Assembly: GCF_006345805.1 (NCBI RefSeq)
Contig: NW_021832902.1
Coordinates: forward strand, 1-29,429
Reading direction: 5' to 3'
DNA: 29,429 nucleotides
Origin: Octopus sinensis
Taxonomy: Eukaryota
Position 1 is the stretch's first letter. Each line of letters opens with the position of its first letter. This document shows, piece after piece, positions 28,511-29,429 of the stretch. The position numbers and the translations under genes are program-made. The notes beneath the pieces are model-generated. The model was not told where the DNA came from. It did no database searches and saw only the letters and a list, made by a program, of their open reading frames with translations.

Positions 28511-29429
28511 TCTATCTATCTATCCGCTCAGTCGAAGTCGACTCTCGGTTTCTCGTTGGATCAGTGTCCTCCAGTCAGTTCTATCCTGGGCCGCTTCTTT
28601 CAGATTGGCTATGTCCATTCCGGTATCACTCTTGATGGTGTCAAGCCAGCGGGTTCTTGGTCGGCCTCTTCCTCTCTTGCCACTGACCATTCCGTATATA
28701 TATATATATATATCTATCCGCTCAGTCGAAGTCGACTCTCGGTTTCTCGTTGGATCAGTGTCCTCCAGTCAGTTCTATCCTGGGCCGCTTCTTTCAGATT
28801 GCTATGTCCATTCCGGTATCACTTTGATGGTGTCAAGCCAGCGGGTTCTTGGTCGGCCTCTTCCTCTCTTGCCACTGACCATTCCGTATATATATATATA
28901 TATATCTATCCGCTCAGTCGAAGTCGACTCTCGGTTTCTCGTTGGATCAGTGTCCTCCAGTCAGTTCTATCCTGGGCCGCTTCTTTCAGATTGGCTATGT
29001 CCATTCCGGTATCACTCTTGATGGTGTCAAGCCAGCGGGTTCTTGGTCGGCCTCTTCCTCTATGCCACTGACCATTCCGTATATATATATATATATCTAT
29101 CCGCTCAGTCGAAGTCGACTCTCGGTTTCTCGTTGGATCAGTGTCCTCCAGTCAGTTCTATCCTGGGCCGCTTCTTTCAGATTGGCTATGTCCATTCCGG
29201 TATCACTCTTGATGGTGTAAAGCCAGCGGGTTCTTGGTCGGCCTCTTCCTCTCTTGCCACTGACCATTCCGTATATATCTATATATATCTATCCGCTCAG
29301 TCGAAGTCGACTCTCGGTTTCTCGTTGGATCAGTGTCCTCCAGTCAGTTCGATCCTGGGCCGCTTCTTTCAGATTGGCTATGTCCATTCCGGTATCACTC
29401 TTGATGGTGTCAAGCCAGCGGGTTCTTGG
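28511..29429 (-). repeat. Tandem array (about 192-bp unit, 4 full + 1 partial, runs off the window) made of an RTE/BovB-like LINE 3' end plus (TA)n
   Basis: Unit starts at 28520, 28714, 28906, 29097 and 29289; the minus strand of unit 1 (28693 to 28520) encodes GMVSGKRGRGRPRTRWLDTIKSDTGMDIANLKEAAQDRTDWRTLIQRETESRLRLSG*. Confidence 0.92.

What the first reader, a model, noticed from the sequence alone, without database searches (positions are those of the whole stretch)
28511..29429. A satellite being born from a LINE tail: tandem array of a BovB/RTE-like 3' terminus
Seen: units of 194, 192, 191 and 192 bp plus a partial one, differing by only 1-2 changes per unit outside the 17-19-nt (TA)n spacer. 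Each minus-strand unit is the last 57 codons of an RTE ORF (GKRGRGRPRTRWLD...AAQDR..WR...SRLRLSG*), which parallels the BovB C-terminus as I recall it (GRRRRGRQRMRWLD...DREAWR...SRTRLSD*). All complete units begin at the same base, and only the terminal unit has a (TAGA)3 tail. Inference: one 5'-truncated insertion in a (TA)n tract was amplified recently by unequal exchange or rolling-circle copying, or reverse transcriptase re-primed repeatedly. The array multiplies the LINE 3' recognition signal. It is missed by the ORF track because it is under 60 aa.
Basis: partly seen in the sequence, partly recalled or inferred. Interest (0 to 1): 0.75.

Follow-up and report, generated by a model that had tools for sequence, protein, structure and literature searches.

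The report
Tandem array of a LINE tail
The window ends in at least 4.7 head-to-tail copies of a ~192-bp unit, made of the last 170 bases of a BovB-type RTE retrotransposon plus a (TA)n linker; it is real, but it is an ordinary case of a transposon fragment amplified locally.

Summary
Tandem Repeats Finder reports 28513-29429 as a 192-bp repeat, 4.8 copies, 97% matches. It runs off the window end. On the minus strand each unit is a 168-170-nt core, then a stop codon, then a 22-24-nt linker ATAGATA(TA)nC. Only the 3'-most unit carries a clean (ATAG)3AT tail.

The 57-residue peptide is the C-terminus of an RTE/BovB-type reverse transcriptase. It has 2360 HMMER hits. The closest relatives, at 60-70% identity, sit downstream of RVT_1 domains. 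They align with sheep and ruminant BovB-type tails. Eight relatives share a hairpin just before the stop, and each has its own microsatellite tail after it.

All four internal junctions are identical (..TATAC|GGAATGG). Every difference between units is private to one unit. This points to one 5'-truncated insertion whose unit plus linker was then copied at the DNA level. It argues against repeated insertion or reverse-transcriptase template jumping.

The far junction, the total copy number and other loci could not be examined. "A satellite being born" is therefore unproven. LINE-tail tandem arrays are already known, for example Bov-A2, the chicken CR1 HinfI repeat and Drosophila tail-to-internal tandems. 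I rate this a new member of a known kind, of low to moderate interest.

The parts
28510..29429 (-). Whole visible array: at least 4.7 head-to-tail units of a BovB-like LINE 3' end. It is truncated by the window end.
   Evidence: Tandem Repeats Finder period 192, 4.8 copies, 97% matches; unit coordinates.
28510..28523 (-). Terminal microsatellite tail ATAGATAGATAGAT of the 3'-most unit. It overlaps the stop codon TAG at 28520-28522 and is the native RTE-type tail.
   Evidence: Sequence. Relatives likewise end in a stop codon followed by, or overlapping, their own microsatellite: (GAA)n, (CAA)n, (TCA)n, (ATTGG)n. The RTE 3' UTR is 'extremely short' and made of simple repeats (PMC2887409).
28524..28693 (-). 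Unit 0 core, 170 nt. It equals the array consensus and has an open 57-codon frame.
28524..28548 (-). 3'-terminal hairpin just before the stop codon: CCG-AG-AGUCG-ACUU-CGACU-GAG-CGG. It is repeated in every unit.
   Evidence: It appears in the minimum-free-energy fold of the unit. It is also the consensus structure of 8 relatives: the inner 5-bp stem is nearly invariant, the loop varies, and 2 outer pairs show changes on both sides. A role as the reverse transcriptase recognition signal is inferred, not tested.
28694..28717 (-). Linker 1, 24 nt, ATAGATA(TA)8C. It includes the stop codon of unit 1.
28718..28885 (-). Unit 1 core, 168 nt. Two private 1-nt deletions break the frame.
28886..28909 (-). 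Linker 2, 24 nt, ATAGATA(TA)8C.
28910..29078 (-). Unit 2 core, 169 nt. A private deletion plus a G>T change break the frame.
29079..29100 (-). Linker 3, 22 nt, ATAGATA(TA)7C.
29101..29270 (-). Unit 3 core, 170 nt. One private G>T change (D>Y); the frame is open.
29271..29292 (-). Linker 4, 22 nt, ATAGATATATATAGATATATAC. It has a T>G change inside the TA run.
29293..29429 (-). Unit 4, a partial core of 137 nt cut by the window end. One private, synonymous A>C change.
28200..28509 (.). Unique flank 3' of the element. It contains no LINE-like coding sequence. It starts (sense) TCAGTGAGAGTCAGTGG.
   Evidence: tblastn finds no match here. Local alignment to the unit is not significant: 88 of 500 shuffles score as high.

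Best explanation
A BovB-type RTE retrotransposon inserted here once, on the minus strand, by target-primed reverse transcription. Reverse transcription stopped about 170 nt from the 3' end. This left a dead fragment: the last 57 codons, the stop codon and a short (ATAG)n tail.

A first tandem duplication then joined the AT-rich tail to a (TA)n run lying immediately 5' of the fragment. Microhomology between ATAGATA and TATATA would allow this, by replication slippage or by unequal sister-chromatid exchange. That event created the hybrid linker ATAGATA(TA)nC.

Once two 192-bp copies existed, ordinary unequal exchange or slippage between whole units raised the count to at least five. Slippage within the TA run then produced the 22-nt and 24-nt linker lengths.

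The array is non-coding debris. Each unit still carries the family's 3' hairpin.

Shown: the array, its LINE origin, the identical junctions and the distinct terminal tail. Inferred: the order of events, the (TA)n origin of the linker, and the DNA-level copying.
For: - The array and its unit anatomy are confirmed.
- The peptide belongs to the BovB/RTE tail family. There are 2360 HMMER hits at E<=1e-3. P0001 (70% identity) lies downstream of an RVT_1 ORF on its contig. P0007 (67% identity, Ascaphus truei) aligns at 46% over 167 aa with a ruminant-type tail protein, including RRIDAFELWCWRRLLRxPWTA. Its homologues include proteins from Ovis aries, Lepisosteus, Dinothrombium and Plectus. That is the patchy BovB distribution described in PMC6036668.
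- In relatives the native tail of the family is a short microsatellite starting at the stop codon (PMC2887409). The terminal unit has exactly this, (ATAG)3AT. The internal linkers keep only ATAGATA and then switch to a pure TA run plus C. That is the pattern expected for a single recombinant junction that was then copied.
- All four junctions are base-identical, including the extra C and the same truncation point.
- All differences between units are private and there is no higher-order pattern.
- DNA-level tandem duplication within BovB-like tails occurs independently elsewhere. L003 has a 156-bp x5 in-frame array that excludes the stop codon and tail, so tail re-priming cannot have made it.
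Against: - The 5' end of the array lies beyond position 29429. A (TA)n tract in the original flank, a target-site duplication and the total copy number are all unseen.
- No target-site duplication can be recognised between the linker end (TATAC) and the 3' flank (TCAGTG...).
- Because RTE tails are themselves variable microsatellites, ATAGATA(TA)n could be a native tail variant rather than flank sequence.
- With only private differences (a star-like pattern), a single-burst copying process fits as well as stepwise unequal exchange. Such processes include rolling-circle copying, break-induced replication and reverse transcriptase concatenation.
- The differences are 4 transversions and 3 one-base deletions, with no transitions. 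This is an odd spectrum for germline decay and may include assembly noise.
- No reads were available to confirm the copy number.
Confidence: 0.68

Rival explanations
1. The array is one inserted copy of a composite, multi-monomer non-autonomous retroposon, analogous to ruminant Bov-A2. It would consist of several BovB-tail monomers joined by short linkers, with the microsatellite tail only at the 3' end. It would be transcribed as a whole and mobilised in trans by the BovB-like reverse transcriptase. The amplification into monomers would have happened in a master copy elsewhere.
For: The architecture matches the one described for Bov-A2: two 116- and 117-bp monomers homologous to Bov-B, a 27-bp linker, and a terminal (AGC)n repeat only at the end (PMC4324840, citing Onami 2007). 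Here the monomers are 168-170 nt, the linkers are 22-24 nt and only the terminal unit has (ATAG)3. Each monomer keeps the conserved 3' hairpin.
Against: No second copy exists in the window. No related array was found among 6 related metagenome loci, and there were no exact matches in the GTDB genome or IMG/VR collections. No protein above 70% identity to the peptide exists among 5.8 billion clusters. None of these collections is known to contain the host genome, so this is absence of evidence only.
Confidence: 0.12
2. The concatemer was made in a single retrotransposition event by the reverse transcriptase itself. After reaching the 5' end of a short template RNA, it jumped repeatedly to the 3' tail of another copy of the same RNA, or re-primed on it. 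This would write several units into one insertion.
For: Non-LTR reverse transcriptases can jump templates serially, with non-templated nucleotide addition (PMC8857657; bioRxiv 10.1101/2021.04.30.442027, seen by title and abstract only). The star-like pattern of private differences, rich in 1-nt deletions, could be polymerase error from one burst. The extra C at each junction could be a non-templated addition.
Against: This would need a template RNA with one fixed 5' end at GGAATGG. It would also need the same added nucleotide and the same tail at all four junctions, whereas I would expect jump junctions to vary (my expectation, not tested here). The first-primed (terminal) unit has a different tail, (ATAG)3, from all the others, which read ATAGATA(TA)n. 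If all came from one RNA species they should share a tail. The L003 array shows that this region can become tandem without involving the tail at all.
Confidence: 0.08
3. The array was built by successive independent insertions of 5'-truncated copies into the same site or into the tail of the previous copy. This is the double-insertion model.
For: Tail-to-internal tandems of non-LTR elements are common in Drosophila and are attributed to repeated insertion (PMC5932611).
Against: Independent truncations would fall at different positions. Here at least four units are truncated at the same base and share the same extra C.
Confidence: 0.02
4. The copy number, or the array itself, is partly an assembly artefact. 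A real single or short repeat may have been over-expanded or mis-polished. Alternatively a much longer array may have been collapsed, with the contig breaking inside it.
For: The window ends inside the array, and its odd length (29429) suggests a contig end; this is an inference. The differences between units are only transversions and 1-nt deletions, which looks more like consensus error than mutation.
Against: Units differ in linker length and carry distinct private changes, so they are not simple copies of one read pile. The terminal junction to unique flank is clean.
Confidence: 0.1

Closest known systems
5'-truncated RTE/BovB copies with microsatellite tails (RTE clade non-LTR retrotransposons)
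   Same: The coding C-terminus of the reverse transcriptase ORF runs almost to the 3' end. The stop codon is followed directly by a short simple-sequence tail. 3' partial copies are the commonest form (PMC2887409).
   Different: Such copies are normally dispersed singletons. Here the fragment plus a linker is repeated head to tail at least 4.7 times.
Bov-A2 retroposon of ruminants
   Same: It is built from BovB-homologous monomers joined by a short linker, with a microsatellite only at the 3' end (PMC4324840).
   Different: Bov-A2 is a dispersed, mobile dimer with about 116-bp monomers and an (AGC)n tail. Mobility, dispersal and a defined monomer number are not shown here. Which part of BovB the Bov-A monomer corresponds to was not checked.
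LINE-derived satellites and tandem repeats: chicken HinfI/CR1 (3' UTR plus partial ORF2), the common cetacean satellite/L1 3' end, and HeT-A-derived 18HT
   Same: The tandem units derive from the 3' part of a LINE, including coding sequence (review PMC9659126).
   Different: Those are large, established, often heterochromatic arrays. This one is a small, nearly undiverged local array of unknown full size.
Tail-to-internal tandem dimers of non-LTR elements in Drosophila (McGurk and Barbash 2018)
   Same: The tail of one copy abuts an internal, 5'-truncated point of the next. These dimers are proposed as seeds of satellites (PMC5932611).
   Different: Those are attributed to repeated insertion and have varied truncation points. 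Here the junctions are identical, which points to DNA-level copying of one unit.
Internal 156-bp x5 array in a BovB-like copy of assembly GCA_051903775.1 (L003 10571-11352)
   Same: The same region of the same LINE family has become tandem. Its unit starts two codons upstream of where the window unit starts. It shows 93% matches.
   Different: The L003 unit is in frame, excludes the last 8 codons, the stop and the tail, and has no linker.

Membership tests
RTE clade, BovB-type LINE (3' fragment) | C-terminal ORF sequence homologous to BovB/RTE reverse transcriptase tails | tested here: met
   There are 2360 HMMER hits at E<=1e-3, including proteins with ruminant-type tails at 36-44% identity. 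The close relative P0007 aligns at 46% over 167 aa with such a protein. P0007 also has a sheep homologue at 57% identity.
RTE clade, BovB-type LINE (3' fragment) | The tail peptide is contiguous with a reverse transcriptase domain | tested here: met
   This was met in relatives only. L001 carries an RVT_1 ORF upstream of the 70%-identical tail. Many P0007 homologues carry PF00078. The window copy is truncated before the reverse transcriptase domain.
RTE clade, BovB-type LINE (3' fragment) | Single ORF with an AP-type endonuclease plus reverse transcriptase, about 3.2 kb full length | not tested
   No full-length parent element was recovered, and the host genome was not available.
RTE clade, BovB-type LINE (3' fragment) | Extremely short 3' UTR made of a simple-sequence repeat | tested here: met
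   The terminal unit reads stop TAG within (ATAG)3AT. Relatives show TAA(GAA)n, TAA(CAA)n, TAA(TCA)n and TAG(ATTGG)n. This is the definition given in PMC2887409.
RTE clade, BovB-type LINE (3' fragment) | Target-site duplication flanking the insertion | not testable with these tools
   The 5' end of the array lies beyond the window end.
Satellite DNA (TE-derived) | Head-to-tail tandem units of uniform length | tested here: met
   Period 191-194 bp, 97% matches.
Satellite DNA (TE-derived) | Long arrays (hundreds of units or more), multiple loci, or heterochromatic location | not testable with these tools
   Only 4.7 units are visible. No other copies were found in the window or in the searchable collections, none of which is known to hold the host genome.
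Bov-A2-like composite retroposon | BovB-derived monomers joined by a linker, with the microsatellite tail only at the 3' end | tested here: met
   compared with the description in PMC4324840.
Bov-A2-like composite retroposon | Dispersed copies of the whole composite, each with its own target-site duplication | not testable with these tools
   This needs the host genome.
Reverse transcriptase template-jump concatemer | Junctions formed independently at each jump, so with variable added nucleotides or variable 5' ends (my expectation for this mechanism) | tested here: not met
   All four junctions are identical...TATAC|GGAATGG.

The most novel reading that the evidence does not exclude
The array is the master or a daughter copy of a new multi-monomer, tail-only retroposon of an invertebrate. 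This would be an independent, convergent counterpart of ruminant Bov-A2. Tandem copies of the BovB 3' hairpin plus microsatellite would create an RNA with several reverse transcriptase entry sites. That RNA could spread as a non-autonomous element, or it could soak up the LINE's reverse transcriptase. The independent tandem arrays found in the same region of BovB-like tails in other genomes (L003, P0047) would then point to a recurrent route from LINE tail to SINE-like element or satellite.
Probability: 0.1. Interest if true: 0.55.

Novelty: new member of a known kind. Interest (0 to 1): 0.25.

Why it matters
If the reading is right, this is a young snapshot of the first steps by which a dead LINE fragment becomes a tandem repeat. 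The array is about 99% uniform, and its terminal junction still shows the native tail next to the recombinant linker.

Such early stages are rarely caught. They can show which mechanism seeds TE-derived satellites: microhomology at AT-rich microsatellites, double insertion, or reverse transcriptase jumping.

It also has a practical consequence. The array would confuse repeat annotation, ORF calling and assembly. Spurious plus-strand ORFs of 92-171 aa run through it, and a contig may end inside it.

It does not change what is known about RTE biology.

Tried and rejected
- **Other copies in the window.** blastn and tblastn of the unit against the window found only (TA)n matches outside the array.
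- **Same-family copies in public data.**
  - A peptide search of 5.8 billion clusters gave only three hits, at 60-70% identity.
  - The metagenome-contig scan gave 6 loci at <=49% identity, and no tandem array was apparent among their matches.
  - Exact 23-mer and 21-mer scans of the GTDB genomes and IMG/VR found nothing.
  - So dispersal of the array could not be tested.
- **Pfam.** No model covers the tail peptide or P0007.
- **Rfam and tRNA scans of the window.** No matches.
- **Whole-unit RNA fold.** It is not more stable than shuffles, z = -0.74. Only the small terminal hairpin is supported, through its conservation in relatives.
- **Is the 3' flank a decayed older unit?** Rejected. The alignment score is reached by 88 of 500 shuffles. 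An 8-nt match, GTCAGTGG, near the unit start is significant only in a post-hoc test.
- **Higher-order repeat.** Tandem Repeats Finder's 383-bp period has the same score as 192 bp, and no variants alternate between units.
- **Host identification.** Searching the neighbouring LINE ORF returned only unnamed metagenome proteins. A CpG observed/expected ratio of 0.84 argues against a vertebrate. The resemblance of the window's SINE-like repeats to octopus SINEs is from memory only.

Full report
**Observation**

The last 920 bases of the window are a tandem array. Tandem Repeats Finder reports 28513-29429 with period 192, 4.8 copies, 97% matches and score 1742. An anchor search places unit starts at 28524, 28718, 28910, 29101 and 29293. 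This gives units of 194, 192, 191 and 192 bp and a 137-bp partial unit cut by the window end.

Read on the minus strand, each unit has two parts. The first is a 168-170-nt core, GGAATGGTCAGTGG...CGACTTCGACTGAGCGG. The second is a linker of 22-24 nt, ATAGATA(TA)nC. All four core-to-linker-to-core junctions are identical (...TATAC|GGAATGG). Only the 3'-most unit ends differently, with ATAGATAGATAGAT followed by unique sequence TCAGTGAG....

The cores differ at 6 of 814 positions, and there is one further change in a linker. Every change is private to one unit, and unit 0 equals the consensus. The unit occurs nowhere else in the window. The 57-codon frame is open only in units 0 and 3 and in the partial unit 4. 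Units 1 and 2 carry frameshifts.

**What the unit is**

The minus-strand peptide is GMVSGKRGRGRPRTRWLDTIKSDTGMDIANLKEAAQDRTDWRTLIQRETESRLRLSG*. It has 2360 hits at E<=1e-3 in an exhaustive HMMER search of 1.84 billion representative proteins.

- The nearest relatives are 60-70% identical. They extend N-terminally with ...KLSYFGHIMQSKSLEKDIMLGMVSGKR.... The unit therefore begins in mid-ORF.
- On its contig, the 70%-identical relative lies downstream of an ORF with a reverse transcriptase domain, RVT_1.
- P0007, 67% identical and from the frog Ascaphus truei, aligns at 46% over 167 residues with a protein of the ruminant type. The alignment includes the motif RRIDAFELWCWRRLLRxPWTA.
- Its homologues include proteins from sheep, spotted gar, a velvet mite and a nematode. 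This is the patchy distribution described for BovB (PMC6036668).
- From my own knowledge, the many two-stretch hits (...LMLGKIEGRRRRGRQRMRWLDGITDSMD...DREAWR...SRTRLSD) are bovid BovB and BovB-derived SINE sequences.

Membership of the BovB-type branch of the RTE clade is therefore supported for the tail. The endonuclease and full-length architecture could not be tested, because no parent element was available.

**The 3' end of the family**

In every relative whose DNA I could read, the ORF runs to within a few bases of the element's end. The stop codon is followed or overlapped by a short microsatellite that differs between lineages:

- TAA(GAA)n in L001
- TAA(CAA)n in L003
- TAA(TCA)n in L012
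- TAG(ATTGG)n in L010
- longer repeat units in L004 and L013

This is the RTE hallmark of an extremely short 3' UTR made of simple repeats. Frequent 3' partial copies are part of the same hallmark (PMC2887409).

Just before the stop codon all eight sequences can form the same hairpin. It has an inner stem AGUCG/CGACU and a 4-nt loop that differs in almost every sequence. It also has an outer stem CCG/CGG in which two pairs show changes on both sides. The whole unit is not unusually structured, with z = -0.74.

By analogy with other LINEs that recognise their own 3' end, the hairpin plus microsatellite is probably the reverse transcriptase entry signal. That is an inference. So the statement that the array multiplies this signal is literally true of the sequence, but it is functionally untested.

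**How the array most likely arose**

The terminal unit has the kind of tail the family normally carries, a microsatellite built on the stop codon: (ATAG)3AT. The internal linkers keep only ATAGATA of it. They then switch to a pure TA run ending in a C that does not belong to the LINE. The closest relative whose upstream DNA I read, L001, has CTT in front of GGAATGG.

The simplest reading is that the linker is one recombinant junction, formed between the tail and a (TA)n run that lay just 5' of a single 5'-truncated insertion. It formed once, through AT-rich microhomology, by slippage or unequal sister-chromatid exchange. It was then propagated with the unit by ordinary unequal exchange. The TA run later slipped between 7 and 8 repeats.

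The identical truncation point and the identical extra C at all four junctions argue strongly against independent insertions. That is the double-insertion route documented in Drosophila, where truncation points vary (PMC5932611).

They also argue against serial template jumping by the reverse transcriptase. I would expect such jumps to give variable junctions. All units should then also share the tail of the first-primed unit.

An independent case shows that DNA-level tandem duplication does happen in this region. A BovB-like copy in assembly GCA_051903775.1 has a 156-bp x5 in-frame array. It excludes the last eight codons, the stop codon and the tail. P0047 has a 35-residue x3 duplication of the adjacent segment.

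**What remains open**

- The 5' end of the array is outside the window. The (TA)n flank, any target-site duplication and the true copy number are therefore unseen.
- The window ends inside the array, and its odd length suggests that the contig ends there. This would fit an array longer than the assembler could resolve. It is only an inference.
- The pattern of differences is star-like, with no shared variants. It consists of four transversions and three one-base deletions, with no transitions. This fits a single burst of copying, and it may partly reflect consensus error in a repeat.
- The overall layout is monomers, short linkers and a microsatellite tail only at the end. This is the layout reported for Bov-A2, the BovB-derived dimeric retroposon of ruminants (PMC4324840). 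I cannot exclude that the array is a copy of a mobile composite.
- I found no other copy in any searchable collection. None of those collections is known to include the host genome.

**Comparison with what is known, and novelty**

Tandem repeats and satellites derived from LINE 3' ends, including coding parts, are well documented. Examples are chicken HinfI/CR1, the common cetacean satellite/L1 and HeT-A-derived repeats (review PMC9659126). Tail-to-internal tandems of non-LTR elements have been proposed as the seeds of satellites (PMC5932611).

This locus is a clean, young example for a BovB-type element in what is probably an invertebrate genome. The CpG observed/expected ratio is 0.84, and RTE-BovB is reported to be greatly expanded in cephalopods (PMC10294476). 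It is a new member of a known kind.

"A satellite being born" is a possible future for the array, not a demonstrated state.

**Verdict**

- The LINE-tail identification is supported.
- The mechanism is most likely one truncated insertion followed by DNA-level amplification (confidence about 0.68). The main rivals are a composite retroposon (0.12), an assembly artefact in copy number (0.10) and reverse transcriptase concatenation (0.08).
- Interest is 0.25.

Noticed in passing
L003 10571-11352 (GCA_051903775.1, CM122937.1): An independent 156-bp x5 in-frame tandem array lies inside the C-terminal region of a BovB-like copy, with 93% matches. Its unit starts two codons upstream of where the window unit starts. 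It excludes the last 8 codons, the stop codon and the (CAA)n tail. A gene model (P0004) reads through it.
   Followed up: partly
L014 5922-13769 (GCA_030710605.1, CP092881.1): A 154-bp x51 satellite-like array with 98% matches. Its spliced gene model (P0005, 1081 aa) gives 17 weak matches (29% identity) to the LINE-tail peptide. The LINE origin is uncertain.
   Followed up: partly
window 28524-28548 and the equivalent position in L001, L002, L003, L004, L010, L012, L013: A conserved hairpin, AGUCG-N4-CGACU inside CCG...CGG, lies immediately before the stop codon of BovB-like elements, and its loop is variable. The conserved protein motif S-R-x-R-L may partly reflect this RNA or DNA structure. 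Each lineage has a different microsatellite tail.
   Followed up: partly
window 28524-29429: All differences between units are transversions (4) or one-base deletions (3). There are no transitions and no insertions. This is unusual for germline mutation and may reflect polishing error or error-prone copying.
   Followed up: no
window 28485-28509 versus 28674-28693: The 3' flank (sense TCAGTGAGAGTCAGTGGAAGA) shares GTCAGTGG-AAGA with the first 20 nt of the unit. This is significant only in a post-hoc local test (10 of 2000 shuffles). It is probably chance, but could be microhomology from the original integration.
   Followed up: partly
window 17271-17858 (+): A 195-aa open frame encodes the C-terminal part of a different LINE reverse transcriptase (...MDREVWRSMV...). 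It has 273 homologues, up to 89% identical, and several carry RVT_1.
   Followed up: partly
window 1253-1564 (+) and 23702-24019 (+): Fragments of a mariner/Tc1-type transposase. The first matches Pfam Transposase_1 at E = 1.9e-18. The second looks like an N-terminal DNA-binding part but has no Pfam hit.
   Followed up: partly
window 12565-13051, 13417-13865, 16348-16719, 19534-19844, 26595-26818, 12397-12428: Exceptionally long microsatellites: (TAT)162, (CATA)112, (TCT)n of about 370 bp, (CTAT)/(CT)n, and (TA)114. There is also a short interstitial telomere-like (CCCTAA)2.7.
   Followed up: no
window 238-335, 8357-8451, 9285-9382; 7279-7542, 7700-7779, 15854-16248; 9028-9105, 17124-17201; 8785-8992, 25664-25871: Several families of dispersed SINE-like repeats at 80-95% identity, in both orientations. 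ARAGORN finds no tRNA genes in the window. From memory they resemble octopus SINEs. The window's CpG observed/expected ratio is 0.84 and its GC content is 39%, so the host is unlikely to be a vertebrate.
   Followed up: partly
window 28556-29071, 28605-29021, 28942-29220 (+): Spurious plus-strand ORFs of 171, 138 and 92 aa run through the array, antisense to the LINE frame. They are artefacts of the repeat, not genes.
   Followed up: no
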